This document shows, one piece after another, positions 119 to 14,589 of a stretch of DNA of 64,000 bases. The stretch is from the IMG/VR virus record IMGVR_UViG_3300035703_000006, positions 1-64,000 of that record. One strand, 5' to 3'. Each line of letters starts with the position of its first letter. Position 1 is the first letter of the stretch. The translations under genes were made by a program, and so were the position numbers. The notes below the pieces were generated by a model that did not search any database, was not told where the DNA came from, and was given only the letters and a program-made list of their open reading frames with translations.

Positions 119-177
119 TGTGACACTCGTAGCACTGGCACACTAAACCCCCACAGCACCCCCTGATGCCCTATAAT
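119..177 (+). promoter_or_regulatory. Early promoter cassette 1
   Basis: TGTGACA(119-125)-N10-TGGCACA(136-142)-CTAAA; TATAAT at 172-177; no -35 hexamer. Confidence 0.8.
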
Positions 178-203
178 ACAGGGACACAAGCAAAGGAGAC
201 CTG

Positions 204-455: not shown

Positions 456-457
456 TT

Positions 458-838: not shown

Positions 839-931
839 TGACTTATTTTGTAGTTTATTTGATACTTCTTAGTATCGCACTGGTTTTTAATTACTCTCTT
901 CATTCAGTTAATCCAAAGGACGACGATTAAA

Positions 932-1066
932 ATGCACGATTCTACTCTTGACCTGTTTTGTGAACACGAGTCTGCTGAGTATGCAGATGAGTATGCACTG
1001 GAGATTGAAAGGAAAGCAGCAGAACTTGAAGTAACTGTTGATTATTATATGGCAGAGTTTATGTGA
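932..1066 (+). CDS. Small acidic hypothetical protein (44 aa, ...EIERKAAELEVTVDYYMAEFM)
   Basis: Hand-translated, below the ORF-track cutoff; AAGGA RBS; resembles a small-ORF family I recall from cyanophages. Confidence 0.7.
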   Translation: MHDSTLDLFCEHESAEYADEYALEIERKAAELEVTVDYYMAEFM

Positions 1067-1070
1067 TCTC

Positions 1071-1129
1071 TGTGCCACTTCTGAGACCGTCCAGCACTCT
1101 TCCCGAACTAACGGGAGGGGTGCTATAAT
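1071..1129 (+). promoter_or_regulatory. Early promoter cassette 2 (degenerate right arm)
   Basis: TGTGCCA 1071-1077; TGCTATAAT 1121-1129; same 53-nt offset as cassette 1. Confidence 0.75.
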
Positions 1130-1159
1130 GTATGAATACAAACGTGATTTGATTTATTG

Positions 1160-2395: not shown

Positions 2396-2422
2396 ATTAT
2401 ATTATGTGTGACAAATAGAATT

Positions 2423-2587
2423 ATGCCTTTTACAAAGAAGTTTCCACAATCAGGAGAAACAATTCACATTCGAGTTCCAAAGTGTTATGCTGAACTAATT
2501 GAGGAATTGATGGTAACTTTAGATGCACGATTTGATGTAGAAAAAGGAAAACATCTTCTTCATAAGTTCATACACAATCTCACCTGA
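2423..2587 (+). CDS. Small ribbon-helix-helix-like DNA-binding protein, paralog A (54 aa)
   Basis: Hand-translated MPFTKKFPQSGETIHIRVPKCYAELIEELMVTLDARFDVEKGKHLLHKFIHNLT; strand-helix-helix pattern; similar to 10936..11100. Confidence 0.6.
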   Translation: MPFTKKFPQSGETIHIRVPKCYAELIEELMVTLDARFDVEKGKHLLHKFIHNLT

Positions 2588-2659
2588 GTCTTGAGAGTCG
2601 TTGTGCCAGTTGTAGTGGTGGCACACTAAATGAGCACTGACCCGTGATTGTGGTATAGT
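2585..2659 (+). promoter_or_regulatory. Early promoter cassette 3
   Basis: TGAGTC 2585-2590; TGTGCCA 2602-2608; TGGCACA 2619-2625; TGGTATAGT 2651-2659. Confidence 0.8.
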
Positions 2660-2683
2660 AGTTCTATGGTTGAGGAAGACCCG

Positions 2684-2851
2684 ATGACTTACGCACCACA
2701 CATTCCACATAACATTCCTTATTTGCTTGTTCCTGAGAATCGAGTAAAGTGTGTTTTTGATTGGTATAAGAGAGGGCAAGACCATCCAATGAACTTTCCT
2801 GCTTATGCTTATTGGATTCAAAAATGTGAAAGTGATGGGAGTGATTACTGA
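2684..2851 (+). CDS. Hypothetical early protein (55 aa)
   Basis: ATG 2684 after GAGGA RBS, downstream of cassette 3. Confidence 0.7.
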   Translation: MTYAPHIPHNIPYLLVPENRVKCVFDWYKRGQDHPMNFPAYAYWIQKCESDGSDY

Positions 2852-3043
2852 ATGACTACTCAAACTCTACTCAACAAAGTTCTAATGATTGAAGAATTGC
2901 TCAACGAAAAGCAACTCACTGCACTGCGTGATATGCTTTATGTGTATAAAGAACTTCAGAGTGAGGTTCATAATTATCCTCCTGAAGATACTTTGTTCAC
3001 TCAAACTCAATTTGAAATCTTTGACATTTTCGACATCAAATGA
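2852..3043 (+). CDS. Hypothetical early protein
   Basis: Abutting ORF in operon. Confidence 0.7.
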   Translation: MTTQTLLNKVLMIEELLNEKQLTALRDMLYVYKELQSEVHNYPPEDTLFTQTQFEIFDIFDIK

Positions 3044-3249
3044 CTTCAATCTCTTTTACATCTGGTGAGTTGCTTGATATTATCAAAACACTTGAGGAAA
3101 AAGAAAATCTTGCCTACCTGGTAGATTATGACCCAGGACTTGCTGCTTATTATATGAATCTTGGAAATCAATTCCAAACAATCTATGATAAGTTGCAAGA
3201 ACTCCCTGGAGAGTCTAGAGTTGCCAATCTTGTCCTTGCTGTAAATTGA
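3040..3249 (+). CDS. Hypothetical early protein
   Basis: ATGA stop/start overlap with the previous ORF. Confidence 0.7.
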   Translation: MTSISFTSGELLDIIKTLEEKENLAYLVDYDPGLAAYYMNLGNQFQTIYDKLQELPGESRVANLVLAVN

Positions 3250-3515
3250 TGATGGAAAAGCACAATCTGGTTATTCTTTCCACTGCACACCTGCATCCAT
3301 TGGAAGCAGCAAAGATTGATGAGTTTGCTTATGTTGGAAACAAAGAGTGTGCTCTTGTTAATACATCTCCAGAGATGAGAGATTTTTATTATCAAGGTGG
3401 ATTGGTTTGTTTGTGCGACCTTCTAAAAGAAGTGCAAGAAAAGCACAATGCAGATTATGTGTTGTTTGACCCCGATGCAAACACTACTGATGGGTTTAAG
3501 TATTATGATTGGTGA
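3249..3515 (+). CDS. Hypothetical early protein
   Basis: TGATG coupling; ends directly at cassette 4. Confidence 0.7.
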   Translation: MMEKHNLVILSTAHLHPLEAAKIDEFAYVGNKECALVNTSPEMRDFYYQGGLVCLCDLLKEVQEKHNADYVLFDPDANTTDGFKYYDW

Positions 3516-3575
3516 TGTGCCAGTCGTAAAGGTGGCACATTAGACAATCCAATGGGGCACTTGATGCCCTATAAT
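3515..3575 (+). promoter_or_regulatory. Early promoter cassette 4
   Basis: Perfect ATGTGCCA-N10-TGGCACAT 3515-3540; TATAAT 3570-3575. Confidence 0.8.
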
Positions 3576-3596
3576 GACTTCATACGCAACCAACTG

Positions 3597-3788
3597 ATGA
3601 CTTACGATGAAGTTTATGAAATGATTTGCCGTATGGAAACGTATGGTGGGTCATTTGTTGTTGCACTTGCTGGTGCAATGCGAAAAGCAGATGCCTCTAA
3701 TAAAAATAGATTGATTCTTGCATTTCCTGAATATGTGCAAGAATATGGTCCTGATAGCAAGTTCCCTGTCCCTACTAAGTCTCTGTGA
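3597..3788 (+). CDS. Hypothetical early protein (63 aa)
   Basis: ATG 3597 downstream of cassette 4; motif YGGSFVxALAxAxxxADxxN. Confidence 0.75.
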   Translation: MTYDEVYEMICRMETYGGSFVVALAGAMRKADASNKNRLILAFPEYVQEYGPDSKFPVPTKSL

Positions 3789-3958
3789 ACTACCTTTGTT
3801 TGGTTGATGGTCTGCTAGAATATGCTAGCACCAGTCCCTCAAACTTTGCACATTATCAGTTAATGTATTCTGAAGAGCATAGAAATGCTGATGTTCAGTT
3901 TCTTACTTTGACTGATGAGGAGTATGATGAAATGTTCCCTTATGAGGAGGATGAATGA
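3785..3958 (+). CDS. Hypothetical acidic protein (57 aa)
   Basis: Hand-translated; GTGA overlap with the previous stop; MNYLCLVDGLLEY...EEDE. Confidence 0.65.
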   Translation: MNYLCLVDGLLEYASTSPSNFAHYQLMYSEEHRNADVQFLTLTDEEYDEMFPYEEDE

Positions 3959-4134
3959 AACCTAAGTTCCGTGTTATTCTTGAAATGGCAATTGAACAAG
4001 GTGTTCAACGTGGTTGGCGTCTTGCTCATAAACATGTAGAGAATCCAGAAGAGCATGTAATCATTGAACGTATCAATGATTCTGTAATGTCTGAAATCTA
4101 CGAATACTTTACTTTTGAGGATGAGAATTTCTGA
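3955..4134 (+). CDS. Hypothetical protein (59 aa)
   Basis: Hand-translated; ATGA overlap; MKPKFRVILEMAIEQGVQRGWRLAHKH... Confidence 0.7.
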   Translation: MKPKFRVILEMAIEQGVQRGWRLAHKHVENPEEHVIIERINDSVMSEIYEYFTFEDENF

Positions 4135-4556
4135 TGTTGAAAACTAAAATGAATCCTGAAGTTAAGCAGAAGTGGATTGATGCTCTGCGTTCTGGTGATT
4201 ATGAGCAAGGTAGTGAGAAACTCCGTGGTGTAAATGGTTATTGTTGCCTTGGTGTTCTTTGTGACATTTATGCACGAGAACATGATACTCAATGGGAGTT
4301 CAGGGGTTATGATGAACTTAGTGATGAATCTAATCCACATCCAATGGATTATTGGTATTTTGATGACCAAAGTGAGTTTCTACCTAAAATTGTGATGAAT
4401 TGGGCAGGATTGAAAACTCATAATCCTTCAGTGAGAGTTGATATTGAAGATAATTTTGGTGATGATAATTCTTTTTATACCGATGAGATTGCCAATGTGA
4501 ACGATTCGGGTTATACTTTTATGGACCTTTCTAAAATTATCGAACAACAACTCTGA
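4134..4556 (+). CDS. Hypothetical phage protein with YCCLGVLC motif
   Basis: 140-aa ORF coupled to both neighbours. Confidence 0.75.
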   Translation: MLKTKMNPEVKQKWIDALRSGDYEQGSEKLRGVNGYCCLGVLCDIYAREHDTQWEFRGYDELSDESNPHPMDYWYFDDQSEFLPKIVMNWAGLKTHNPSVRVDIEDNFGDDNSFYTDEIANVNDSGYTFMDLSKIIEQQL

Positions 4557-4744
4557 TGCAAGAAGATAACACTCTGTCTCAAGGACGCATTGCAACTCAC
4601 AAATCTGTGAATGTTGCTATCTATTTCAATGATGAAATGGATGATGGTGAAGTGCGAGACTTCATTGAACGTGCCCTTGAAAAGTATCAACATCCAGATG
4701 ACATTGTGAAAAACTATGAATACTGGTATGATGTTGAGTCTTAA
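4556..4744 (+). CDS. Hypothetical protein
   Basis: TGATG coupling. Confidence 0.7.
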   Translation: MQEDNTLSQGRIATHKSVNVAIYFNDEMDDGEVRDFIERALEKYQHPDDIVKNYEYWYDVES

Positions 4745-4811
4745 GTGAGAATGTGCCAGTTGTAGCACTGGCACACTATATCCCCCAAACCCCTGCTGGT
4801 GGTGCTATGAT
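4735..4811 (+). promoter_or_regulatory. Early promoter cassette 5
   Basis: TGAGTC 4735-4740; TGTGCCA 4752-4758; TGGCACA 4769-4775; TGCTATGAT 4803-4811. Confidence 0.8.
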
Positions 4812-4832
4812 GAACGGAGTTCAAAGAAACCA

Positions 4833-5264
4833 ATGATCTCTCTGCGGAATCCAATTATGGAAATCAACTACAAAGAAGTTTATTCTCAGAAAACTGCGAA
4901 TAAAATTGAAGAATTGGTTGCTGAATCTTATTGTCTTGAGGACATTGTAGAGTTCATTGAAGAAAACTCTGAAGAAGATTTCTGTAATCTTTATGAAGAG
5001 TATGTGAATGTTGGTGAGCAGTATTCTTATGGTGCTGTAGATGCCTTCATTGAAGAGTTTGGTCTTCAATCTTTCACTGCCACTTGCTTTGAAGATGCTT
5101 ACCGAGGACAATGGGAATCTAAAGCAGATTATGCTGAAAACTATGTCACTGATTGTTATTCTATAGATCTGCCTGGTTTCCTGGAGATTGACTGGGAAGC
5201 AACATTTGATAATCTGGATGTGACCATCACTGAGAATGGTTATGTGTTCGACACTCAATTCTGA
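4833..5264 (+). CDS. ArdA-like antirestriction (DNA-mimic) protein
   Basis: Very Asp/Glu-rich; C-terminus YRGQWESKADYA...FLEIDWEATFDNL...NGYVF matches the ArdA C-terminal pattern; first gene after cassette 5. Confidence 0.6.
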   Translation: MISLRNPIMEINYKEVYSQKTANKIEELVAESYCLEDIVEFIEENSEEDFCNLYEEYVNVGEQYSYGAVDAFIEEFGLQSFTATCFEDAYRGQWESKADYAENYVTDCYSIDLPGFLEIDWEATFDNLDVTITENGYVFDTQF

Positions 5265-5267
5265 ACT

Positions 5268-5420
5268 ATGAAACTTTATCTTCAAGACAAGGCAGTTGAA
5301 TTGATTCTCTATTGCTTGGAACAACAAGCAAGTGAGTTCAATGAGGAAGAAATGAAGGATTATGAACATATCCTTCATTCCATTGAAATTGCAAATGATT
5401 CTGTTGATTTCAATTTCTAA
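5268..5420 (+). CDS. Hypothetical protein (50 aa), paralog of 10226..10387
   Basis: Hand-translated; LILYCLEQQASEFNEEE. Confidence 0.65.
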   Translation: MKLYLQDKAVELILYCLEQQASEFNEEEMKDYEHILHSIEIANDSVDFNF

Positions 5421-5686
5421 TGATGCCTGATTTTCCTACAATTCAATCTAAGGATGGCACTATGATAGTGTCATTTTATCCAGTCAAAACACCATTTGGT
5501 GATATATCTGAGACCTGGACATTTAAGGTTCTTGAGTGGAAAGGTATTGAGACAATCTCCAAGAGGTTCATTAACAAAGTTGAGAAAAAAGTTCAACTTA
5601 GGGAATATGAATCTTTTGGTTATGTTTTTGTAAAAGACAATGCGGATCTTCCGCAACTTGGTAATCCTATGGCAGGTGCTGTGTAA
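5420..5686 (+). CDS. Hypothetical protein
   Basis: TAATG coupling. Confidence 0.7.
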   Translation: MMPDFPTIQSKDGTMIVSFYPVKTPFGDISETWTFKVLEWKGIETISKRFINKVEKKVQLREYESFGYVFVKDNADLPQLGNPMAGAV

Positions 5687-5901
5687 TGTTATTTCAATTA
5701 ACTGATATTGAGTTTGATTTTGATGATGGTGAGGAAATCTCTGGAGAACTTCCTTATGATGAACAAGTTGCAGTTGCTCAATCTGTCATTGGTGAAGTTT
5801 TTGATGTCGAATCTGAAGATGACCTTGCCGATGCAGTTAGTGATTACACTGGTTGGTGTGTGAAATCTCTTAATTATGTTGCAATCTCTGAATCTCACTG
5901 A
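5686..5901 (+). CDS. Hypothetical acidic protein
   Basis: TAATG coupling; highly acidic. Confidence 0.7.
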   Translation: MLFQLTDIEFDFDDGEEISGELPYDEQVAVAQSVIGEVFDVESEDDLADAVSDYTGWCVKSLNYVAISESH

Positions 5902-5902
5902 A

Positions 5903-6097
5903 ATGCCTGAAATGAATCGTGACCAACTGATTGAAGACTATATCCAGACACTCATTGAGAATATGGACTATAAGACAATGGAGTGTTTTGTTTATGATAC
6001 TCTGAAAGAGAATCTTTCTACCTACACTGATGAGGAACTTCTCACTGAAGTGGAAGAATACAATCCAGAACTCCTCGGTCTAGACGAATCTGCCTGA
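5903..6097 (+). CDS. Hypothetical acidic protein
   Basis: ATG 5903; its TGA is the start of cassette 6 (TGAGTC). Confidence 0.7.
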   Translation: MPEMNRDQLIEDYIQTLIENMDYKTMECFVYDTLKENLSTYTDEELLTEVEEYNPELLGLDESA

Positions 6098-6169
6098 GTC
6101 TAGTGTTGAGATGTGCCACTTGTTCTAGTGGCACACTAAATGAGCACAGACCCCAAAAGGTGCTATATT
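6095..6169 (+). promoter_or_regulatory. Early promoter cassette 6
   Basis: TGAGTC 6095-6100; TGTGCCA 6112-6118; TGGCACA 6129-6135; TGCTATATT 6161-6169. Confidence 0.8.
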
Positions 6170-6226
6170 AAGAGGGTGGAAGGGGTCAGACCCACCCACA
6201 AACGTCCAAACTCTATCTTAATCAAA

Positions 6227-6430
6227 ATGACTGCTGTTGTTGATTTCTCTAAGGATGTGATGCTCGGTATGCTTCGCAAGGGGCAAACTGGAACTCAGAT
6301 TCTGGACATTCTGAATGTTCTGGTTCCTGAGCAAACTGAACTCACTCGTGAGCAAGTTTGTGAGGATCTGGGCATTGCTGATTGTCCCGAGAATGATGAT
6401 GAGATTGCCCGTGCAATGTCTGCTGTCTGA
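6227..6430 (+). CDS. Hypothetical protein (67 aa)
   Basis: ATG 6227 after the cassette 6 leader. Confidence 0.7.
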   Translation: MTAVVDFSKDVMLGMLRKGQTGTQILDILNVLVPEQTELTREQVCEDLGIADCPENDDEIARAMSAV

Positions 6431-6528
6431 GTGATTAAATAGAAACGATAGAGGGCAAGTCCCTGTTATGTCCTGATGAGGCATATCACACTTGCTCCAT
6501 CAAAACAATTCCTTCATTATTGAAACCA

Positions 6529-6717
6529 ATGTTTGTTATTTGTCCCGCATCATTTGATCTGGTTGATGCAGAGTGGTTTGATAATGTTTATGAAGCAAAA
6601 GAAGAAGCACTCGACTGGAGTGTTGAACTTGCTGGTCGCAATGTGATTGTTTATGAGGCACTTGAAGATGATGATGGTGCTTATGACTTCAAACCCGTAA
6701 GTTCAATCTGTGCTTGA
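6529..6717 (+). CDS. Hypothetical acidic protein
   Basis: ATG 6529 (TTG 6520 is an alternative start). Confidence 0.7.
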   Translation: MFVICPASFDLVDAEWFDNVYEAKEEALDWSVELAGRNVIVYEALEDDDGAYDFKPVSSICA

Positions 6718-6863
6718 TGAAGACCTTAACATTCAAGGCACCAAATAAGATGAAGACTATAATTCTTATCTTTGCAGTTGCTTTTGTATTCTCTCCTGGA
6801 GTGCGAAATGCAACTGCAAATACTCTTTACAATGTTGCTGACATTATCAGCACAAATCGGTGA
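6717..6863 (+). CDS. Small putative membrane protein (48 aa)
   Basis: Hand-translated; hydrophobic stretch IILIFAVAFVF; its TGA starts cassette 7. Confidence 0.6.
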   Translation: MKTLTFKAPNKMKTIILIFAVAFVFSPGVRNATANTLYNVADIISTNR

Positions 6864-6935
6864 GTCCAGTGTTGAGATGTGCCACCTGTAGCACTGGCAC
6901 ACTAAACGGGCACTGGAACTTTTTTCTGGTAGATT
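6861..6935 (+). promoter_or_regulatory. Early promoter cassette 7
   Basis: TGAGTC 6861-6866; TGTGCCA 6878-6884; TGGCACA 6895-6901; TGGTAGATT 6927-6935. Confidence 0.8.
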
Positions 6936-6987
6936 AAGAGGGTGGAGGGGGTCAGTCCCACCCGAGTCCCAATCTCAATTCTTTACA

Positions 6988-7644
6988 ATGGATCGCACTC
7001 AAGTTATTGCAAAGATTCAGTCCATTCTGAAACTGCAAGAGAACACTACGTTTGATGGTGAAGCATCTGCTGCTGCTGCGATGATTGATAAACTCTGCAA
7101 GCAGTATGGTGTTACGATCAGTGAAGCAACTGAAACTCAAGTTCTCGATGAATCTTTTCTCAACTTCAAACGTGTAAATGTTGCACTGACAACTCTTCTC
7201 AATGCAATTGCATCTTTCTATGATGCAAAAGCATATATGAAGAATGGTGATACCAAATCTCTGCAAGTGATTGGTTCTGAAGCACAACAAATCCAAGTGC
7301 GTCTCTATTATGATTACCTGGTGCAGGTGATGGAGAAAGAAGCAGAAGTTGCACATCAAGCAGAAAAGATTATGTCTGCTCTGCAAGGTAAAGCAATGTC
7401 CCGTAGTTTCAAACTTAATTTCCGCAAGGCATTTGCAGATAATGTTGCTCTGCGTTTGCGTGAGATGAAAGAAGCAGAGGGACGAGTTCATGATGATGCT
7501 GATGCAGTGAAAAACAAACTCTCTGCAATGCGATTCGGACGTGCCAAGAAGATGAATGGTGCAAGTGGTGCTGGTGTTGGTAGTTCTGTTTCTTTGAATC
7601 GTCAAGCAACTGGTTCTGTGACCAAACAACTCTGTGGAGTGTGA
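6988..7644 (+). CDS. DUF2786-like domain protein
   Basis: N-terminus IAKIQSILKLQENTTFDGEASAAAAMIDKLCKQYGV matches the DUF2786 pattern; FRKAFA motif. Confidence 0.7.
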   Translation: MDRTQVIAKIQSILKLQENTTFDGEASAAAAMIDKLCKQYGVTISEATETQVLDESFLNFKRVNVALTTLLNAIASFYDAKAYMKNGDTKSLQVIGSEAQQIQVRLYYDYLVQVMEKEAEVAHQAEKIMSALQGKAMSRSFKLNFRKAFADNVALRLREMKEAEGRVHDDADAVKNKLSAMRFGRAKKMNGASGAGVGSSVSLNRQATGSVTKQLCGV

Positions 7645-7663
7645 GTTTCACACTCCTTTTTTT
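7636..7663 (+). terminator. Intrinsic terminator
   Basis: GGAGTGTGA-GTT-TCACACTCC 9-bp stem followed by T7, overlapping the stop of 6988..7644. Confidence 0.75.
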
Positions 7664-7684
7664 CCTTTAATTTTTTGATACGAG

Positions 7685-8017
7685 ATGAACGCACAACTTT
7701 CGATTGATGAGTGTAAAATTATGTGGGTTGTTGGAGCACTTGAACGACTTGCAACTTTAGGTTTGCTTGGTCCTGATGTTCCACTGAAACTTTCTGCTCA
7801 TGCAGTAGAAGATTATATTCAGATTGACGAGCATCGGGAACTTTTGTTTGAGTCAGATTTTGAGATTGCAAGTATTATGACTGCACTGATCAATGATGAA
7901 TGTGATCCAGAAGTTCAAGATCCTGAAGATACAAATCTTCTGATTGATCTTCTGCTAGAGTATAAGAATAATCGCACTGAGATTGTGAAGTATGCACTCT
8001 CTTATCAACTCATCTGA
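7685..8017 (+). CDS. Hypothetical protein
   Basis: 110-aa ORF; its TGA starts cassette 8. Confidence 0.75.
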   Translation: MNAQLSIDECKIMWVVGALERLATLGLLGPDVPLKLSAHAVEDYIQIDEHRELLFESDFEIASIMTALINDECDPEVQDPEDTNLLIDLLLEYKNNRTEIVKYALSYQLI

Positions 8018-8089
8018 GTCCAATGATACCCTGTGCCACTTGTACTGGTGGCACACTAAATGAGCACGGGGTTAAAAATGTGGTATTAT
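8015..8089 (+). promoter_or_regulatory. Early promoter cassette 8
   Basis: TGAGTC 8015-8020; TGTGCCA 8032-8038; TGGCACA 8049-8055; TGGTATTAT 8081-8089. Confidence 0.8.
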
Positions 8090-8148
8090 TAAAGGGTGGA
8101 GGGAGCAGGGGTGCCTGTCCCACCCACGAGACCCATTGTTTATTCTTT

Positions 8149-8727
8149 ATGACTTCTTTCACGATTGTTAAAAAAGGTGAAGAAATCAAGTTTGATTCTC
8201 AATTCACTGATGTGAATGAAGTGCGTAACTATCTGCGTGAGCAGATGTCTTACAACAACTTCGCAATGGATCTTGTTGAGAAGAAGAAAGTGTCTGCAAC
8301 TCAAATTGCTTGGATGCATTATCTTGCAACTCAAAGTGTAATTGATTCTCAAACTCCTGTTGAGTTTGGTCCTTACAAGCAACTTGTCAACAAGATGTAT
8401 GATGCAGGTGCATATCGAGCAACTAAGTTTCAAGTGCGACTGCCTGGAATTACTCTGAGCACTGTAACTAAAGGTGTCAATGTTGGTTGTGTTTATGTTT
8501 ATGAAAACAACCAATATGTTGGTAAAATTACTGCTACTGGTGATCTGATTGGTAACGTGAGTGAGGATGTTATCAATCTTCTGGAAGATGCCAATGATAA
8601 TCTCCTGCAACTGGCAAAGATTTATGGTCACGAGACTGGTACTTGTTCAATCTGTGCTCGCACACTGAATGATCCTCTCTCTGTTCAGATGGGAATTGGT
8701 CCTGTTTGTGCCAAACGACTCGGTTGA
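8149..8727 (+). CDS. DUF6011-like Cys/Zn-motif protein
   Basis: C-terminal GTCSICARTLNDPLSVQMGIGPVCAKRL; ATG 8149 lies downstream of cassette 8 (the track start at 8023 lies inside the promoter). Confidence 0.7.
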   Translation: MTSFTIVKKGEEIKFDSQFTDVNEVRNYLREQMSYNNFAMDLVEKKKVSATQIAWMHYLATQSVIDSQTPVEFGPYKQLVNKMYDAGAYRATKFQVRLPGITLSTVTKGVNVGCVYVYENNQYVGKITATGDLIGNVSEDVINLLEDANDNLLQLAKIYGHETGTCSICARTLNDPLSVQMGIGPVCAKRLG

Positions 8728-8756
8728 GTTCTTTATTCACTTTATTCCTCAAAACA

Positions 8757-9005
8757 ATGTTTGACCTTCTTAATTTTCAACCTCATTCAATTCCTGAATG
8801 TATTCAAGCACGATATAAGTTTGAGAATGATTGGGAGATTTCTGTTGTTGCGGGTCCACCGAATTGTGGATTATATGGTAATCTGAATGAGAATACTTAT
8901 GAAGTTGCTATTTTCCGACCGAATGGTAATATGACCGAAGATGTCAATGGTTGGAATACAAAACAAGAAGTCTCTGCGATGATGTGGGTGCTGTCTCAAC
9001 TCTAG
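8757..9005 (+). CDS. Hypothetical protein
   Basis: ATG 8757; ISVV...GLYG...YEVAI. Confidence 0.7.
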   Translation: MFDLLNFQPHSIPECIQARYKFENDWEISVVAGPPNCGLYGNLNENTYEVAIFRPNGNMTEDVNGWNTKQEVSAMMWVLSQL

Positions 9006-9054
9006 ACTCGCATACCCATCAGGGATGCTGATAGGTAGAACAATCGTAGACCCC

Positions 9055-9083
9055 TTGACAAACCCCCCGATCCGTGCTATGAT
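9055..9083 (+). promoter_or_regulatory. Canonical sigma70-type promoter
   Basis: TTGACA 9055-9060, 17-nt spacer, TG-C-TATGAT 9075-9083. Confidence 0.8.
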
Positions 9084-9105
9084 GAACGAAGTTCAGAGTC
9101 AAGAG

Positions 9106-9279
9106 ATGACCACTGCTCAACGGATGGAAAAGCAATTCTTTATTTCTTTCATCCGACTTGTTGATGAGGTTCAAGGTAAGCAAAAACTTCCTTCACAGAT
9201 TCAATCGAATCGTAAGTCTGTTTGGGTGAAGCAAACACAAAATCCTAAGCAAAAGAAAGATGCTCTTGCCCGAATCTAA
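9106..9279 (+). CDS. Hypothetical basic protein (57 aa)
   Basis: ATG 9106 after the promoter. Confidence 0.7.
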   Translation: MTTAQRMEKQFFISFIRLVDEVQGKQKLPSQIQSNRKSVWVKQTQNPKQKKDALARI

Positions 9280-9316
9280 ATCTTTCTTTCATCTGTCCCA
9301 CACAAACAAACAAGAA

Positions 9317-9481
9317 ATGCTGATCAAAACTGTTTTCGACGTTCAGACCAAACAACCTGGTTATGCTGTGTGTGATCCTCACACTGAACGTTGTGGTTTT
9401 GTGACTTACAACATTCTCAATGCAATTAAAGCAGGACAATGTAAGTCTTTCACTGAAGTCCAACAACTCATCAATGCCTGA
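9317..9481 (+). CDS. Hypothetical protein
   Basis: ATG 9317, in operon. Confidence 0.65.
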   Translation: MLIKTVFDVQTKQPGYAVCDPHTERCGFVTYNILNAIKAGQCKSFTEVQQLINA

Positions 9482-9632
9482 AATGTTTGAAGTTACTTAT
9501 CAAGTTCCTTACAACAATCAAGAGTGGAGAAGTCAATACTTCAATACTCGCAAAGAAGCACAATCAATGGTAGAGTTCTATCAATCTTGTGGTTCACCTG
9601 CTAAACTCATTGAACGTCAAGTCAGCAACTAA
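9474..9632 (+). CDS. Hypothetical protein
   Basis: ATG 9474; YQVPYNNQEWRSQYF...MVEFYQSCGSPA. Confidence 0.7.
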   Translation: MPEMFEVTYQVPYNNQEWRSQYFNTRKEAQSMVEFYQSCGSPAKLIERQVSN

Positions 9633-9737
9633 ATGAAACGCAAAGAAAAGATTCAACTACTCTCCAAAGCACAAATCGGCAATGATCTTCTACTCATTGC
9701 TCAAGCAATTCTCAATTCTCAAAAGGACAAGAAATGA
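9633..9737 (+). CDS. Small hypothetical protein (34 aa)
   Basis: Hand-translated; fills the gap exactly, with an ATGA overlap to the next ORF. Confidence 0.5.
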   Translation: MKRKEKIQLLSKAQIGNDLLLIAQAILNSQKDKK

Positions 9738-9928
9738 TTCTCATTCGCAAAGAAAATCACGGGTGCATTTATACGATTGATCCAGAATCCAATGAACTTT
9801 ATTATGCTCCTGTCTATCAAGATAACACTGTAAATCTTTCTGAGTTTGCACCAGTTGATCTTGATGATTATGATGATGTAAGTGAAATTGAATCTATTCA
9901 ACAACAACTTATTCAAGCAATCAAATGA
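9734..9928 (+). CDS. Hypothetical protein
   Basis: Coupled ORF. Confidence 0.7.
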   Translation: MILIRKENHGCIYTIDPESNELYYAPVYQDNTVNLSEFAPVDLDDYDDVSEIESIQQQLIQAIK

Positions 9929-10221
9929 AACAATCAGTTAAAGATGTTATTAATCAACTTGAAAAACTGAATCCAAACGAAACAATTTTTTCACTCATTT
10001 ATACAAAGAATGATGTGAAAGAACTAGAGCATTATGATCCAATTACAGGACAAATTGTTTATCCTTATAATGATGAACTCGCAGAACAGGTTTTGTCTAA
10101 TCTAGATTGTTATGATGTAATCTATGAAACGATTTACAAGTGTATGAATGATGAAGTTTCTTATCAAGTCGATCAATTAGCAAAGAAAGAAAACATTACT
10201 ATTGAACCTGCTTCTTACTAA
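9925..10221 (+). CDS. Hypothetical protein
   Basis: ATGA overlap. Confidence 0.7.
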   Translation: MKQSVKDVINQLEKLNPNETIFSLIYTKNDVKELEHYDPITGQIVYPYNDELAEQVLSNLDCYDVIYETIYKCMNDEVSYQVDQLAKKENITIEPASY

Positions 10222-10225
10222 TACA

Positions 10226-10387
10226 ATGCAAGAAACATTTGTAAGGTTAAGTGAAGATCAAATCAATTTGATTCTATTCACCTTAGAACAACAAGAGAGT
10301 GATTTCAATTCTGTTGAACAATCTCTATGTGAAGCAATCATTGATACTTTCACCACTGCTTTAGTAGAGTTAAACACTCAAGCATAA
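10226..10387 (+). CDS. Hypothetical protein (53 aa), paralog of 5268..5420
   Basis: LILFTLEQQESDFNSVE; last gene of the early block. Confidence 0.65.
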   Translation: MQETFVRLSEDQINLILFTLEQQESDFNSVEQSLCEAIIDTFTTALVELNTQA

Positions 10388-10390
10388 GAG

Positions 10391-10500
10391 ATTATTATCA
10401 TTTATAACAAAATAACGTTATAATTGATAATTCAATTAAATGTATTAAAAAACATAGTTTAGTGAATTGTGTTGATATGATGATAGTGTTATAAAACCTT
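10391..10500. other. Very AT-rich non-coding tract (candidate DNA-unwinding element)
   Basis: Counted 20 G/C in 110 nt, and 7 in the first 60 nt; contains TTATAAC-N8-GTTATAA. Confidence 0.5.
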
Positions 10501-10557
10501 CTTTTTATTGTCTTATATTCTCTCTAAACCCCTCTGGTTCTTGTTGTCTTGGCCTGC

Positions 10558-10617
10558 ATTATACCATAAGACCTAAAAAAAGTCAAGCACCTTACAGACT
10601 CTTCTAGGGGTGGCACA
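10558..10617 (-). promoter_or_regulatory. Leftward sigma70-type promoter carrying a TGTGCCA half-site
   Basis: Minus strand: TGTGCCA (10617-10611) ... TTGACT (10586-10581), 17 nt, TG-G-TATAAT (10563-10558); half-site 54 nt upstream of the -10, as in the cassettes. Confidence 0.75.
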
Positions 10618-10624
10618 AGGAGTT

Positions 10625-10654
10625 ATTGACAAAAACCTGTCAATACTTTATAAG
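10625..10654 (+). promoter_or_regulatory. Putative rightward sigma70-type promoter inside a palindrome
   Basis: ATTGACA-N6-TGTCAAT 10625-10644; TATAAG at 10649-10654, 17 nt after TTGACA. Confidence 0.5.
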
Positions 10655-10660
10655 AATGAA

Positions 10661-10697
10661 ACTCCTAAGACTCACACATCTTATGAGTCTTAGGAGT
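10661..10697. repeat. Perfect 14-bp inverted repeat
   Basis: ACTCCTAAGACTCA-N9-TGAGTCTTAGGAGT. Confidence 0.85.
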
Positions 10698-10884
10698 ATT
10701 TTGCTAGTTATTCCTGAGACTCACGATACTCAAACCACTTCAAAAACTGGCACATCGTATCATGAGTCTCACAGATTCGGGTGTAGACTTATAGGGTGGG
10801 TGGCAGAGGGAAGATCATCAAATACTGATAACTGATAAGAATTACCCAGAATCCAGTGATTGCAATACTTTTTCGGGGCATTAT

Positions 10885-10934
10885 AGTTTTGTCCCAAAAC
10901 CCCCTATAAATAACCCTAGTTTTGGGACAAAACT
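10885..10934 (+). promoter_or_regulatory. T4-type late promoter flanked by a 16-bp inverted repeat of self-palindromic arms
   Basis: AGTTTTGTCCCAAAAC (10885-10900) ... TATAAATA (10905-10912) ... GTTTTGGGACAAAACT (10919-10934); ATG at 10936. Confidence 0.75.
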
Positions 10935-10935
10935 T

Positions 10936-11100
10936 ATGAGACCTCAAAAGTATAAGAATTTAGGTGAAACTGAAAGAATGCGTGTACCCTTATGCAAGCA
11001 AATTACAAGTTTGTGTGATGCATTAGATAAAAAAGCAGAAGATGGTTATGATGTCGTTGCTTTATTAGATTCGTTCATTGAGAGCATACACAATATGTGA
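10936..11100 (+). CDS. Small ribbon-helix-helix-like DNA-binding protein, paralog B (54 aa)
   Basis: Hand-translated MRPQKYKNLGETERMRVPLCKQITSLCDALDKKAEDGYDVVAYLDSFIESIHNM; shares K[FY]xxxGETxxxRVPxC..LD with 2423..2587. Confidence 0.6.
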   Translation: MRPQKYKNLGETERMRVPLCKQITSLCDALDKKAEDGYDVVALLDSFIESIHNM

Positions 11101-11505
11101 ATCATTCGTTATTACTTATCAGTTCGTCTTATCATTCGTTATATCCTCGCAGTTCGTGCATACTTATCTCTTCGTCTTATGATTCGTTGTCTATACTTAA
11201 CATCATTATGAGTTCATTACACAACCCCCCATAATGTTTGCTATTTGAATCAACCAGTGCTATACTATTCATGATACTCAGTTTCTGACATAAACTGGTG
11301 TCGTCCTCTGAGTATCATTAATACCCTATGAGTTCGTTACACGACCCCCCATAAGGTTTGTTATTCTTATTGACCAGAACTATATTATTCGTGTCTCTCA
11401 GTTCGTGTTATAAACTGATGCCCTCCCTTCGTTATATCTAACCCCCCATATGGTTTCGTATTAGAATAAGGCAGTAATGAATATAAACTATTCGTGATTG
11501 TTCGT
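11070..11505 (+). repeat. Strand-biased TTCGT short-repeat (iteron-like) array
   Basis: 14 TTCGT copies counted on the + strand; the six at 11105-11187 are spaced 18,12,18,18,12 nt; no ACGAA seen in the interval. Confidence 0.75.
11207..11460 (+). repeat. Degenerate 120-bp tandem repeat (2 copies plus a partial third)
   Basis: TATGAGTTC.TTACAC.ACCCCCCATAA.GTTTG at 11207 and 11327; third ACCCCCCATA at 11441. Confidence 0.75.
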
Positions 11506-11736
11506 TTATTATAATTAAACAGCACTGTTTGACACTTATATTTTGTGTTGTTGTATTCTTATATCTAACCGATGCCCCCTATATAAAAACGCATCACTAC
11601 CCTAACCTACAACGGACCGAAAACGACCTTCAAATTGTCTTTCAAATAAAAAAATTTTACCCAATTTTTTTTTTCTTCCAAGGTTCACGCACAAAAAATA
11701 AAAAATGATATATAAGTTTAGAATTCAATAAAAAAG

Positions 11737-12101: not shown

Positions 12102-12851
12102 ATGGCTAAAGGATTTACGGTAAAAGCAAAACTTCCTACAGGTCCTGTGGAAGGAGAATTTAATTTAGAAGCAGCAAAAGAAATGATGAGAGGCAAGTCA
12201 GTTGTCTTTTGTCTACCTGGAAGAGGAGTTTCGTATCTTTATTTGAAGAATTTTGTTCAATTGTGTTTTGATCTTGTTCAAAATGGAGCAAGTATCCAGA
12301 TTTCACAAGATTATAGTTCAATGGTGAACTTTGCCCGATGTAAGTGTCTTGGGGCAAATGTTCTCAGAGGACCTAAGCAAATTCCTTGGGATGGAAAACT
12401 ACAATATGATTATCAACTTTGGATTGATAGTGATATTGTTTTTGACACTGAGAAGTTCTATCGTCTTGTAGCAATGGATAAAGATATTGCTGCTGGTTGG
12501 TATTGTACTGAAGATGGACACACAACATCTGTTGCACATTGGTTGCAGGAAGATGATTTCCGTAATAATGGTGGAGTAATGAATCACGAAACCTTAGAGA
12601 CGATGAGCAAGCGTCGCAAACCATTCACAGTTGATTACACAGGTTTCGGATGGGTTCTGATTAAGAAAGGAGTCTTTGAAAATCTTGAATATCCTTGGTT
12701 TGCTCCGAAGATGCAGGTGTTTGAATCTGGTGAGGTTCAAGATATGTGTGGCGAAGATGTCTCATTCTGTCTAGATGCAAAAGAAGCAGGATTTGAAATC
12801 TGGTGTGATCCTCAGATTCGTGTGGGTCATGAGAAAACAAGAATTATTTGA
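12102..12851 (+). CDS. Glycosyltransferase-like (GT-A fold) conserved cyanomyovirus protein
   Basis: LWIDSDIVF (DxD), GFGWVLIKKGVFE, GEDVSFC, VRVGHEK pattern. Confidence 0.75.
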   Translation: MAKGFTVKAKLPTGPVEGEFNLEAAKEMMRGKSVVFCLPGRGVSYLYLKNFVQLCFDLVQNGASIQISQDYSSMVNFARCKCLGANVLRGPKQIPWDGKLQYDYQLWIDSDIVFDTEKFYRLVAMDKDIAAGWYCTEDGHTTSVAHWLQEDDFRNNGGVMNHETLETMSKRRKPFTVDYTGFGWVLIKKGVFENLEYPWFAPKMQVFESGEVQDMCGEDVSFCLDAKEAGFEIWCDPQIRVGHEKTRII

Positions 12852-13003: not shown

Positions 13004-13150
13004 ATGGCAAAAGCAGCAGCTGGAAAATCAGTATCTTACAATCCAGGTCCTCCGAAGAAAACTCGTCAGGGTGATGGAGATGGGACAAAGTACGCAGCAT
13101 CTTCTCGTAATGGAGCACGTAAGAAGTATCGTGGGCAAGGTAAAGGATGA
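13004..13150 (+). CDS. Small basic hypothetical protein (48 aa)
   Basis: Hand-translated MAKAAAGKSVSYNPGPPKKTRQGDG...RKKYRGQGKG. Confidence 0.75.
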   Translation: MAKAAAGKSVSYNPGPPKKTRQGDGDGTKYAASSRNGARKKYRGQGKG

Positions 13151-13572
13151 ATCGTGAAGATGTTAAAAAACTGATTTATGAGCAACAAACCAAACTGGCA
13201 CCAAGTCAAATACCTGGTGCAGGTGTTGGTGTCTTTGCATTGATTGATATTCCTAAAGATACTTTAATCAAAGGATGCAAAGCATTTAGCGATTTTGTCA
13301 GAAAAGAAGATGAATATGTTTTTGACTGGAATGAATTTGAGGATTTAGATGATAGAATTAAAACATATCTTTGGGGAATGACAGATGGACACGATAGTAA
13401 ATTTTATATTGATGCTCCTCCCTTTATGTTTTATCAAGGATATTACATCAATCATTCAAATACACCGAACTGTTTTTGGGACAGACGAACTTCAAACATC
13501 TATACTCAAATTGATATTAAACCTGGTGAAGAACTGACAATGTATTACATGCCCTCTGAGAGAGATTTCTAA
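13147..13572 (+). CDS. SET-domain protein-lysine methyltransferase-like protein
   Basis: GAGVGVFALIDIPKDT, YINHSNTPNC, IKPGEELTMYY = SET motifs (GxG, NHS, ELxxxY). Confidence 0.85.
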   Translation: MNREDVKKLIYEQQTKLAPSQIPGAGVGVFALIDIPKDTLIKGCKAFSDFVRKEDEYVFDWNEFEDLDDRIKTYLWGMTDGHDSKFYIDAPPFMFYQGYYINHSNTPNCFWDRRTSNIYTQIDIKPGEELTMYYMPSERDF

Positions 13573-14228: not shown

Positions 14229-14262
14229 ATTTTTGCGGAAAATTGAATTGGAAAAGTTCTCA

Positions 14263-14589
14263 ATGGGGAAACACCTCCTTCTGGAGGTGTATGATGTCAA
14301 TTTTAACCTTTTAAATGACGTATATTCTCTTCAAAACGTCATGATTAAGGGCATTGAACGTGCAAAAATGACCATTTTGAACACTTTTTCCCATTGTTTT
14401 CTTCCTCAAGGGTGTACAATCGTCATTGCACTTGCAGAAAGTCATGTTTCTTGTCATACTTGGCCAGAAAATGGGTGTATTGCGATTGATATTTACACTT
14501 GTGGTGATGGAAATCCTAAAATCATTGCAATTGAACTTCTAAAATACTTAAATTCGGAAGAATACAGCATTAGAGAAGTAAATCGTTAA
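14263..14589 (+). CDS. speD: S-adenosylmethionine decarboxylase proenzyme (pyruvoyl-dependent, class 1B)
   Basis: GKHLLLEVY, LAESHVSCHTWPE (E-S cleavage site), DIYTCG. Confidence 0.85.
   Translation: MGKHLLLEVYDVNFNLLNDVYSLQNVMIKGIERAKMTILNTFSHCFLPQGCTIVIALAESHVSCHTWPENGCIAIDIYTCGDGNPKIIAIELLKYLNSEEYSIREVNR

What the first reader, a model, noticed from the sequence alone, without database searches (positions are those of the whole stretch)
10391..11730. 1.3-kb control hub between the early and late genomes: candidate hybrid origin and early/late switch (R-loop promoter, autoregulated RHH protein, iterons)
Seen: one compact interval holds a leftward promoter firing into a purine-rich then AT-rich tract, a divergent promoter, a perfect 14-bp hairpin, a 54-aa RHH-like ORF with operator-like palindromes round its late promoter, 14 one-strand TTCGT repeats and a 120-bp duplication. 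It lies exactly where base composition and promoter class change. Established: T4 ori(uvsY) and ori(34) are a promoter plus a downstream unwinding element primed by an R-loop; T4 oriE uses iterons; many plasmid replicons pair an autoregulated RHH repressor (CopG/ParG/Arc type) with repeats. Inference: these parts form one replication-initiation and temporal-control unit. I know of no mapped origin for cyanomyoviruses, but cannot check this.
Basis: partly seen in the sequence, partly recalled or inferred. Interest (0 to 1): 0.8.

Follow-up and report, generated by a model that had tools for sequence, protein, structure and literature searches.

The report
Cyanophage early–late boundary, candidate origin
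This 1.3-kb gene-poor stretch is the conserved boundary between the early and late genes of an uncultured freshwater T4-like cyanophage. It looks like a replication-origin and promoter region, but its small gene is a leftover piece of a homing endonuclease, not a ribbon-helix-helix (RHH) repressor.

Summary
The single-machine reading holds only in part.

**ORF54 (10936-11100)**
- It has no RHH signal.
- It is the surviving C-terminal domain of a free-standing HNH homing endonuclease. A full-length version sits in the same slot in a relative.
- It is under purifying selection.
- Its "operator palindromes" form a 16-20 bp RNA hairpin with a T4 late promoter (TATAAATA) in the loop and the ribosome site and start codon in the 3' arm. 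This is the design of T4 homing-endonuclease genes.

**The variable slot**
- In most close relatives this slot holds 5-12 perfect cyanobacterial DnaA boxes (TTTTCCACA).
- The window has none.

**Conserved around the slot**
- A leftward host-type promoter (start about 10550) that fires through a purine-rich tract into the least stable duplex nearby.
- A terminator-like hairpin.
- A one-strand TTCGT repeat array, found in 42 distinct relatives, with an embedded conserved promoter.
- A core sequence (inside a roughly 90-nt element) found once per genome in 93 cultured cyanophage records.

**Other points**
- Late-promoter motifs start exactly here.
- My best reading is a T4 oriE/oriF-like origin and transcription boundary whose DnaA boxes were displaced by the endonuclease gene. 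I put origin function at about 0.4.
- Base-composition skew does not support an origin.

The parts
10384..10470 (.). A+T-rich, easily unwound tract (DUE-like) with a highly conserved ~50-nt core
   Evidence: The 80-bp stretch from 10384 is in the 99.7th percentile of least stable duplex in the window. It holds a block of invariant columns across six loci.
10471..10550 (-). Purine-rich initial transcribed region of the leftward promoter; predicted start about 10550
   Evidence: 73% purine in the first 60 nt, and 67-68% in L083 and L087. A contig from an RNA library spans 10340-10549 and ends at the predicted start; this is suggestive only.
10558..10586 (-). Leftward sigma-70-type promoter: -35 TTGACT, 17-nt spacer, extended -10 TGgTATAAT
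   Evidence: 11/12 match. The -35 is invariant and the key -10 positions are kept in six loci. Also present in the distant lineage L106.
10596..10621 (+). Conserved G-rich box (AGAC..TAGG..TGGCA); a second copy lies at 10783-10812
   Evidence: Direct repeat D8. Conserved in the alignments and in L106. Function unknown.
10627..10655 (+). Lineage-specific rightward promoter-like site (TTGACA-17-TATAAG) inside a ~28-nt insertion
   Evidence: Present only in the window and L029.
10661..10705 (+). Hairpin hp1: 14-bp stem, 9-nt loop, then a T-run. Terminator-like on the + strand.
   Evidence: I3. Consensus fold of 8 sequences has 14 pairs, 3 with changes on both sides. Relatives carry TTTTTT after the stem.
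10715..10771 (+). Long hairpin hp2
   Evidence: I4. In the single-sequence fold the whole block has z = -4.1. The consensus fold of eight sequences does not pair these two arms; it pairs the 3' arm with the conserved block to its right instead.
10885..10934 (+). Inverted repeat that forms an RNA hairpin. The late promoter TATAAATA (10905-10912) is in the loop; the Shine-Dalgarno sequence and AUG are in the 3' arm.
   Evidence: dG -30.1 kcal/mol, z = -5.6. One compensatory pair in L083 and L005. Same design as T4 I-TevI, segB and Aeh1 mobE (PMC2988022).
10936..11100 (+). ORF54: stand-alone C-terminal (probably DNA-binding) domain of an HNH homing-endonuclease family
   Evidence: hhalign probability 97%, E = 8e-11 to residues 76-128 of P0011. 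The N-terminus of P0011 matches HNH PHROGs at E = 5e-20. P0011 occupies the same slot in L089. dN/dS 0.14-0.38. No remnant of the nuclease domain upstream.
11070..11505 (+). One-strand TTCGT array; extended motif about (A/C)TTCGT(T/C)AT(A/T). Tight tandem core at 11105-11187 with 18+12-nt spacing.
   Evidence: 42 distinct arrays in relatives, with spacing peaks at 13 and 17 nt and a 30-nt super-period.
11207..11446 (+). Duplication of a 120-nt module, each copy made of a C-run, a promoter-like site and a hairpin; a partial third copy starts at 11440
   Evidence: D1, D2. Both copies also hit in L083 and L087. CCCCCHATA occurs 5 times, only here.
11238..11266 (+). Conserved rightward sigma-70 promoter inside the array: TTGCTA-17-TGcTATACT, start at the adjoining ATTC(G/A)T
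   Evidence: The same module is present in 22 distinct sequences, several with a perfect TTGACA.
11529..11559 (+). Invariant TTGACA with a poor -10 in the window (TATTCT after 19 nt). A good promoter sits at the same place in L106.
   Evidence: Invariant columns. L106 has TTGACA-17-TATAGT.
11575..11664 (+). Widely conserved non-coding element (11575-11664, 90 nt); core at 11585-11612 (AAAAACGC..ACTACCCTAACCTACAA)
   Evidence: Found in 138 of 199 loci and in 93 cultured cyanophage records, one place in every record shown, mostly unannotated. No conserved RNA structure. No Rfam match.
11645..11736 (+). A/T-only hairpin (11645-11656 / 11663-11674) with a T10 run, then an A+T-rich tract up to the first late-block gene
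   Evidence: I17. The 40-bp stretch at 11695 is in the 99.7th percentile of least stable duplex.

Best explanation
The interval is the conserved non-coding boundary between the early-gene block and the late (baseplate) block of an uncultured freshwater T4-like cyanomyovirus. It is a mosaic of four units, not one machine built around a repressor.

**(a) Left unit.** A host-type promoter points left. Its RNA starts at about 10550, is purine-rich for about 60 nt, and then enters the most easily melted DNA of the neighbourhood. This is the promoter-plus-unwinding-element design of T4 oriF/oriG. To its right lie a terminator-like hairpin and a second hairpin.

**(b) Variable slot.** In this phage it holds ORF54. 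ORF54 is the surviving C-terminal domain of a free-standing HNH homing endonuclease. It is still under selection and is controlled as T4 homing-endonuclease genes are. Early read-through RNA folds a hairpin over the ribosome site. Late RNA starts inside the hairpin loop and can be translated. In most relatives the same slot holds 5-12 perfect host-type DnaA boxes.

**(c) Repeat array.** One-strand TTCGTYATA repeats with an embedded conserved rightward promoter.

**(d) Conserved element.** A sequence element found once per genome across cyanomyoviruses, followed by an A/T hairpin and the first late-block genes.

**Most likely mechanism (inferred).** Units (a), (c) and (d) form an origin-type region that host RNA polymerase transcribes early in infection. 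The transcript primes or opens the DNA. In relatives, host DnaA bound to the box cluster helps. In this phage the endonuclease gene displaced the boxes, so any firing here does not depend on DnaA.

**Shown:** the presence, conservation and homology of the parts. **Inferred:** transcription, R-loop formation, DnaA binding and replication.

My confidence that the parts are identified correctly is about 0.85. My confidence in origin function is about 0.4.
For: - **Promoter plus unwinding tract:** conserved. The design matches the roughly 100-bp minimal T4 oriF/oriG (PMC3016281).
- **RNA-library contig:** one contig ends at 10549, one nucleotide from the predicted start.
- **DnaA boxes in relatives:** 52 perfect boxes in 576 kb of relatives against 7 expected, almost all in clusters of 3-8.
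- **IMG/VR scan:** a scan for a box pair returned 105 stretches.
- **Box-element linkage:** the box cluster lies upstream of the conserved element in the same orientation, usually 150-700 nt away, rarely kilobases. This holds even where the pair is displaced from the glycosyltransferase gene.
- **Box identity:** TTTTCCACA is the cyanobacterial DnaA box, and host oriCs carry 1-12 copies (PMC4674748).
- **TTCGT array:** conserved in 42 distinct sequences, with a 30-nt super-period. T4 oriE also has direct repeats plus an early promoter.
- **Conserved element:** one place in every record shown.
- **ORF54 identity and control:**
- **Boundary:** late-promoter motifs begin at 10905.
Against: - There is no experimental or copy-number evidence.
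- GC skew does not invert. Third-position skews change across the boundary with the polarity expected of a terminus rather than an origin, if bacterial rules apply.
- The window has no DnaA box, even allowing two mismatches.
- Boxes are patchy: 4 of 36 relatives with at least 2.5 kb of upstream sequence have three or more. Cultured marine relatives lack them. They are therefore dispensable.
- The conserved core of the repeat is only about 9 nt, shorter than classical iterons.
- No initiator gene was found next to the array.
- Contigs from RNA libraries cover the array, so it may act as RNA.
- T4-like phages replicate mostly by recombination and can lose individual origins.
Confidence: 0.42

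Rival explanations
1. Transcription boundary only. The hairpin hp1 ends early transcription. The conserved sigma-70 promoters, and the late promoter of ORF54, restart transcription into the late block. The conserved element is a 5' leader or promoter-proximal site. In relatives the DnaA boxes make these promoters respond to host DnaA, or soak up DnaA as the E. coli datA locus does. No replication starts here.
For: - Terminator-like hp1 with covariation and a T-run.
- Three conserved promoters.
- In L106 a DnaA box lies inside a promoter spacer.
- Late-promoter motifs begin here.
- Contigs from RNA libraries cover 11104-11627.
- Skews give no origin signal.
- The boxes are dispensable.
Against: - Seven to twelve perfect boxes in two opposed groups is oriC-like in number and far more than known DnaA-regulated promoters carry.
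- A once-per-genome conserved element is unusual for a promoter.
- The leftward promoter has no gene to express and fires into an unwinding-prone tract.
Confidence: 0.33
2. The TTCGT array is made into non-coding RNA from the embedded promoter(s). The RNA carries 10-17 UUCGU(U/C)AU sites and binds or titrates an RNA-binding protein. One example would be the phage RegA-type translational repressor, in the manner of CsrB and CsrA.
For: - Strict one-strand bias: 14 against 0.
- A strong conserved promoter whose start falls on a TTCGT site.
- RNA-library contigs over the array.
- From memory, unchecked: a loose likeness to the T4 RegA selection consensus (UUGUUAUG).
Against: - No conserved RNA structure was tested or found for the array.
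- Part of the array lies upstream of the conserved promoter.
- The 13+17 nt phasing suits a DNA face as well.
- RNA libraries can contain DNA.
- The RegA likeness is weak.
Confidence: 0.12
3. Hypervariable recombination or homing hotspot. The repeats and box clusters are by-products of repeated endonuclease invasion and unequal crossing-over, with no function of their own.
For: - Four slot states and a decay series of the endonuclease: 132, 105, 71 and 54 aa.
- Many metagenome contigs break just upstream of the glycosyltransferase gene.
- The arrays do not align well between relatives.
Against: The motifs are kept while their surroundings turn over. The boxes are perfect 9-mers at seven times the expected number. 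The order of the parts is fixed across distant lineages.
Confidence: 0.1
4. One reading: ORF54 is an autoregulated RHH repressor that binds its own palindromes and the TTCGT iterons, and so couples replication to the early/late switch.
For: - ORF54 is a real, selected gene that derives from a probable DNA-binding domain.
- T4 I-TevI does repress its own late promoter, so self-regulation at the palindrome is possible.
Against: - No RHH family match and no predicted strand.
- The TTCGT arrays exist in many relatives without ORF54.
- The palindrome is unrelated in sequence to TTCGT.
Confidence: 0.03

Closest known systems
T4 oriF (uvsY) and oriG (34): R-loop origins
   Same: A promoter with a sigma-70-type -10 is followed directly by an A+T-rich unwinding element within about 100-200 bp. 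The transcript has no coding role.
   Different: The T4 promoters are MotA-dependent middle promoters, and cyanomyoviruses lack MotA. Here the promoter has a full -35/-10 host-type pattern. Nothing has been shown functionally. The T4 elements lie inside genes, not in a large spacer.
T4 oriE: direct repeats plus an early promoter
   Same: A cluster of short direct repeats on one strand next to an early-type promoter, conserved at a syntenic place in relatives. In both cases the role of the repeats is undefined.
   Different: The T4 repeats are evenly spaced 12-mers. Here a roughly 9-nt core recurs at 13+17 nt (12+18 in the window) and then irregularly. No repEA/repEB-like gene was recognised nearby.
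Iteron origins with DnaA boxes (P1 oriR, F, pSC101, RK2) and cyanobacterial oriC
   Same: In relatives, a cluster of perfect host DnaA boxes in two opposed groups lies next to direct repeats and A+T-rich DNA. Box numbers (5-12) match host oriCs (1-12).
   Different: The window itself has no box. No adjacent initiator gene was found. The carrier is a lytic T4-like phage with its own replisome.
T4-type homing-endonuclease cassettes (I-TevI, I-TevII, I-TevIII, segB, Aeh1 mobE)
   Same: Patchy presence in a spacer. A late promoter is placed so that only late RNA escapes a hairpin that hides the ribosome site. An HNH relative sits at the same locus.
   Different: ORF54 has lost the nuclease domain entirely, yet is kept under purifying selection. 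It is now a small stand-alone, probably DNA-binding, protein.
PeSL (promoter-early stem-loop) cassettes of T4-type phages
   Same: A stem-loop next to an early-type promoter in a region of gene shuffling.
   Different: PeSLs are short motifs repeated many times between small genes. Here the hairpin and promoter occur once and are part of a larger fixed order of elements. This was not tested further.

Membership tests
T4 oriF/oriG-type R-loop origin | Promoter active before late transcription, with a sigma-70-type -10 | tested here: met
   11/12 consensus match with a TG extension. The -35 and the key -10 positions are conserved in six or more loci. This is sequence evidence only.
T4 oriF/oriG-type R-loop origin | [quoted passage not shown] | tested here: met
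   The 80-bp stretch from 10384 is in the 99.7th percentile of least stable duplex. The tract is 84% A+T at +81 to +165.
T4 oriF/oriG-type R-loop origin | Persistent R-loop, and autonomous replication of the cloned element in infected cells | not testable with these tools
   Needs infection experiments. The purine-rich RNA (73%) is merely compatible with a stable hybrid.
Iteron-type theta origin | Array of direct repeats in one orientation | tested here: met
   14 + strand copies against 0 on the - strand, with a 30-nt super-period across 42 arrays. The conserved core is only about 9 nt.
Iteron-type theta origin | Adjacent gene for the repeat-binding initiator | tested here: not met
   ORF54 is absent from many array-bearing relatives. 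The ORFs of 52 and 56 aa also occur in phages without arrays. No Rep-like family hit.
Iteron-type theta origin / oriC-like | Cluster of DnaA boxes | tested here: not met
   The window has 0 perfect boxes in 64 kb, and only one site within two mismatches in the interval. The feature is met in relatives, which carry 5-12 boxes.
Replication origin in general | Strand-composition inflection of origin polarity | tested here: not met
   GC skew is positive on both sides. GC3 skew goes from +0.19 on the left to -0.09 on the right, the opposite of what an origin would give. This is a weak test in a T4-like phage.
Ribbon-helix-helix repressors (CopG/Arc/ParG) | Sequence match to an RHH family | tested here: not met
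   No Pfam or PHROG hit at E <= 0.1. No hit among PDB sequences.
Ribbon-helix-helix repressors (CopG/Arc/ParG) | N-terminal strand followed by two short helices | tested here: not met
   The AlphaFold2 model (pLDDT 83.5) has helices at 11-35 and 40-52 and no strand. Foldseek found no PDB match. A monomer model cannot fully exclude a strand that forms only in a dimer.
T4-type hairpin-regulated homing-endonuclease cassette | Late promoter placed so that late RNA lacks the 5' arm of a hairpin hiding the ribosome site | tested here: met
   TATAAATA lies in the 18-nt loop. The 3' arm covers GGGA and reaches the AUG. dG -30.1 kcal/mol, z = -5.6. One compensatory pair in relatives.
T4-type hairpin-regulated homing-endonuclease cassette | Encodes an HNH or GIY-YIG nuclease | tested here: not met
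   ORF54 holds only the C-terminal domain, with no nuclease remnant upstream. The full-length HNH relative P0011 occupies the same slot in L089.
Intrinsic terminator (hp1) | Stable stem followed by a U-run, kept by covariation | tested here: met
   14 pairs, 3 with changes on both sides. T4-T6 after the stem on the + strand. Only 6 of the pairs are G-C.
Structured non-coding RNA (conserved element 11575-11664) | Conserved secondary structure or an Rfam match | tested here: not met
   RNAalifold on 18 sequences predicts 0 pairs. No Rfam hit, even at E <= 1.

The most novel reading that the evidence does not exclude
Freshwater T4-like cyanomyoviruses carry, at the early/late gene boundary, a sequence-defined replication origin that recruits the host initiator DnaA. 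It would consist of 5-12 perfect cyanobacterial DnaA boxes, a conserved promoter and a once-per-genome conserved element, with a TTCGT repeat array in one clade. This window would then be a natural DnaA-box-less allele, made when a homing endonuclease invaded the box cluster. The endonuclease's DNA-binding domain was then kept as a small protein that acts at the same site.
Probability: 0.3. Interest if true: 0.8.

Novelty: new variant of a known kind. Interest (0 to 1): 0.6.

Why it matters
- **No mapped origin.** In the papers I could search, no replication origin is mapped for any cyanomyovirus. A review only reports a predicted single theta origin in Syn9 (PMC2984593). Two full-text searches for cyanophage with "DnaA box" found nothing relevant.
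- **Concrete targets.** The comparative picture gives testable sites:
  - a promoter plus unwinding tract;
  - a DnaA-box cluster in relatives;
  - a conserved, unannotated element (core 11585-11612) that is also present once per genome in cultured phages such as S-SSM7, P-SSM2, S-ShM2 and S-RIM14.
- **A natural experiment.** The allelic series runs from full box cluster, to ORF54 plus 2-3 boxes, to no boxes. It tests whether a T4-like phage uses host DnaA.
- **A retained endonuclease fragment.** ORF54 is a clear case of a homing endonuclease reduced to its binding domain and kept under selection.

Tried and rejected
- **Rfam:** no match at gathering scores on all 64 kb, or at E <= 1 on the interval. 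No tRNA or tmRNA.
- **Structured RNA for the conserved element:** RNAalifold gave 0 pairs.
- **Micro-ORF for the element:** rejected by eye, because stop codons appear in relatives in every frame (alignment).
- **Host target for the element:** an exact-pattern scan of 596 Gb of genomes gave 67 scattered hits in unrelated taxa, at chance level, with no picocyanobacterial target.
- **ORF54:** no Pfam or PHROG hit. Foldseek against PDB gave nothing. PDB sequence search gave nothing. The ESM Atlas returned only unnamed clusters.
- **BLAST of the interval and of a relative's box cluster against cultured phages:** no syntenic non-coding match.
- **GANTC (CcrM-type) site cluster:** not enriched.
- **Motifs considered and dropped by inspection:**
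  - a sigma-54-like TGGCAC site (no -12 element, and cyanobacteria lack sigma-54);
  - likeness to a T7-type promoter at TATAGGG (does not align, and the phage has no single-subunit polymerase);
  - NtcA and LexA boxes in the promoter hairpin (wrong spacing);
  - DnaA-trio repeats next to the boxes (none).
- **Literature:**
  - The search for PeSL elements returned only one remotely relevant paper.
  - Searches for a Syn9 origin position and for cyanophage start-site maps found no usable open paper.
- **Scripts:** my first regular expression for the leftward promoter hit the wrong places, and I replaced it with coordinates.
Full report
**What the window is.** All long ORFs lie on the + strand. 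Small ORFs fill 1-10.4 kb. From 12.1 kb the window holds a glycosyltransferase (GT, 12102-12851), a SET-domain protein, an AdoMet decarboxylase, gp25, gp6 and giant structural proteins. The glycosyltransferase is about 85% identical, and gp6 about 60% identical, to Synechococcus phages S-SSM7, Sf-FS3 and S-SCSM2R. Near-identical DNA is held by freshwater, subsurface and estuary metagenomes. The window is therefore from an uncultured freshwater T4-like cyanomyovirus.

**Check of the observation.** Every listed feature is present.
- The TTCGT bias is extreme: 14 + strand copies and none on the - strand in 436 nt, against 0.2 expected (p = 2e-21).
- CCCCCHATA occurs five times in the window, all here and all on the + strand.
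- The late-promoter motif NATAAATA occurs 17 times on the + strand, mostly 20-45 nt upstream of start codons, and never left of 10905. The promoter class does change here.
- The main G+C drop lies at 14-15 kb.
- GC skew keeps its sign on both sides.

**Relatives.** I fetched 80 loci through the glycosyltransferase. More came from ORF54 homologues and from a DNA pattern scan. Close relatives share most of the spacer.

**Left unit.**
- The leftward promoter keeps its -35 hexamer, its TG extension and the T-A-n-n-n-T of its -10 hexamer in all six aligned loci. It is also present in a distant lineage, L106.
- It has no gene to express.
- Its predicted RNA starts at about 10550. It is 73% purine for 60 nt and then runs into DNA that is 84% A+T.
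- The 80 bp from 10384 are in the 99.7th percentile of least stable duplex in the window.
- This is the layout of the minimal T4 oriF/oriG (PMC3016281).
- One contig from an RNA library spans 10340-10549 and stops one nucleotide from the predicted start. This is suggestive only, because contigs have no direction and RNA libraries can hold DNA.
- To the right lies hp1, the perfect 14-bp hairpin. It has three pairs with changes on both sides across eight sequences and is followed by a T-run. It looks like a + strand terminator.
- The second hairpin, hp2, pairs well in the window on its own, and the whole block folds unusually well (z = -4.1). The consensus fold of eight sequences does not keep that pairing.
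- The "divergent promoter" lies in an insertion found only in the window and L029.

**ORF54.**
- It has no RHH or any other family match. AlphaFold2 gives two helices and no strand.
- Only 7 relatives turned up among 1.8 billion representative proteins.
- Two of these relatives, of 132 and 105 aa, carry the ORF54 domain at their C-terminus behind an HNH nuclease domain. The PHROG HNH match is E = 5e-20. The hhalign match of ORF54 to residues 76-128 has probability 97% and E = 8e-11.
- The 132-aa protein sits in the same slot, upstream of the same two small ORFs and the glycosyltransferase, in L089.
- Proteins of 132, 105, 71 and 54 aa form a decay series.
- ORF54 is still selected, with dN/dS of 0.14-0.38.
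- Its palindromes fold into a hairpin of -30.1 kcal/mol (z = -5.6). TATAAATA is in the loop, and the Shine-Dalgarno sequence and AUG are in the 3' arm. One pair covaries in relatives.
- T4 I-TevI, I-TevII, I-TevIII, segB and Aeh1 mobE are built the same way. In those genes, early read-through RNA is untranslatable and late RNA starts inside the hairpin (PMC2988022).
- I-TevI also represses its own late promoter, so a DNA-level role for the palindrome is not excluded.

**The slot and the DnaA boxes.**
- Where the window has ORF54, relatives L001, L003, L004 and L029 have 5-8 perfect copies of TTTTCCACA in two opposed groups.
- This 9-mer is the cyanobacterial DnaA box, and host oriCs carry 1-12 copies (PMC4674748).
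- The 80 loci hold 52 boxes against 7 expected, almost all clustered.
- The slot has four states:
  1. a full box cluster;
  2. ORF54 plus 2-3 boxes (L005, L083-L088);
  3. ORF54 without boxes (window, L267; L266 ends too close to the ORF to tell);
  4. full HNH gene without boxes (L089).
- A scan of IMG/VR for a box pair gave 105 stretches.
- In about 70 loci the cluster lies upstream of the conserved element and in the same orientation. The distance is usually 150-700 nt, and in a few loci it is kilobases. The order holds even when the pair sits 6 kb from the glycosyltransferase.
- The boxes are nevertheless patchy: 4 of 36 close relatives have three or more.
- They are absent from the cultured marine phages I checked. 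The freshwater phage DSL-LC02 has two.

**Repeat array.**
- Arrays of 8-17 one-strand TTCGT sites occur in 42 distinct sequences.
- The extended motif is about (A/C)TTCGT(T/C)AT(A/T).
- Spacing peaks at 13 and 17 nt, giving a 30-nt super-period.
- Inside each array lies a conserved promoter, TTG(A/C)(C/T)A-17-TGcTATACT, whose start falls on a TTCGT site. It was found in 22 distinct sequences.
- The window carries this module twice, which is the 120-nt duplication.
- The binder of the repeats is unknown. ORF54 is excluded because many arrays exist without it.

**Conserved element.**
- The core at 11585-11612 is found in 138 of 199 loci. It is also in 93 cultured cyanophage records, at one place in every record shown and mostly unannotated.
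- It has no conserved RNA structure, no Rfam match and no host counterpart.
- It lies just downstream of an invariant TTGACA. That hexamer is part of a good promoter in L106 but has a poor -10 in the window.

**Interpretation.**
- The parts are well identified.
- I favour a T4 oriE/oriF-like origin and transcription boundary that relatives couple to host DnaA. In this phage the homing endonuclease gene removed the boxes.
- Against this:
  - there are no functional data;
  - the boxes are dispensable;
  - no initiator gene was found;
  - the repeat core is short;
  - third-position skews change with the wrong polarity for an origin.
- A purely transcriptional boundary is nearly as likely.
- The RHH-centred model is not supported.

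Noticed in passing
L001:3800-4014, L003:482-653, L004:2165-2333, L138:9576-9880 and about 60 further loci: Uncultured cyanomyoviruses carry clusters of 5-12 perfect cyanobacterial DnaA boxes (TTTTCCACA) upstream of the baseplate gene block. Two full-text searches found no paper that describes this.
   Followed up: yes
window 11585-11612; S-SSM7 GU071098.1 52077-52155; P-SSM2 NC_006883.2 69086-69116: A non-coding core sequence is conserved at one place per genome in 93 cultured cyanophage records. It is mostly unannotated and has no conserved RNA structure.
   Followed up: partly
L089:10-408 (P0011), P0012, P0006, window 10936-11100: A decay series of one HNH homing-endonuclease family (132, 105, 71 and 54 aa). 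The shortest form is still under purifying selection.
   Followed up: yes
window 26208-26412, - strand: Three identical promoter-like matches (TTACCA-17-TATAAT) lie exactly 102 nt apart inside the 578-aa gene at 25637-27373. This points to a tandem 102-nt (34-aa) repeat in that structural protein.
   Followed up: no
window 9001-10390: A local patch of reversed composition just left of the interval: GC skew -0.09 and AT skew +0.11. The cumulative A-T minimum of the window is at 8914.
   Followed up: partly
window 1-10221 versus 12102-46565: Third-codon-position skews differ sharply between early and late genes. AT3 is -0.36 against -0.08, and GC3 is +0.19 against -0.09. This is probably codon usage rather than replication.
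   Followed up: partly
window 8023-8727 and 6988-7644: Two early proteins carry domains of unknown function (DUF6011 at the C-terminus; a DUF7168-like match in relatives). They are conserved in the clade that has TTCGT arrays, and I did not test them as possible array binders.
   Followed up: no
RNA library X17, contigs laid at window 10784-10843 and 11104-11539: A metatranscriptome library holds contigs of a relative that run from the conserved G-rich block straight into DnaA boxes, and from other TTCGT repeats into the array. The box region may therefore be transcribed, or the library contains DNA.
   Followed up: no
window 13147-13572 and 14233-14589: A SET-domain protein (Pfam E = 1e-13) and an AdoMet decarboxylase homologue lie between the glycosyltransferase and gp25.
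   Followed up: no
L198 (Synechococcus phage DSL-LC02, OR032571.1) 513 and 547: The only cultured phage checked that has any perfect DnaA boxes (two, in an unannotated gap) is a freshwater isolate. It could serve as a laboratory model.
   Followed up: partly
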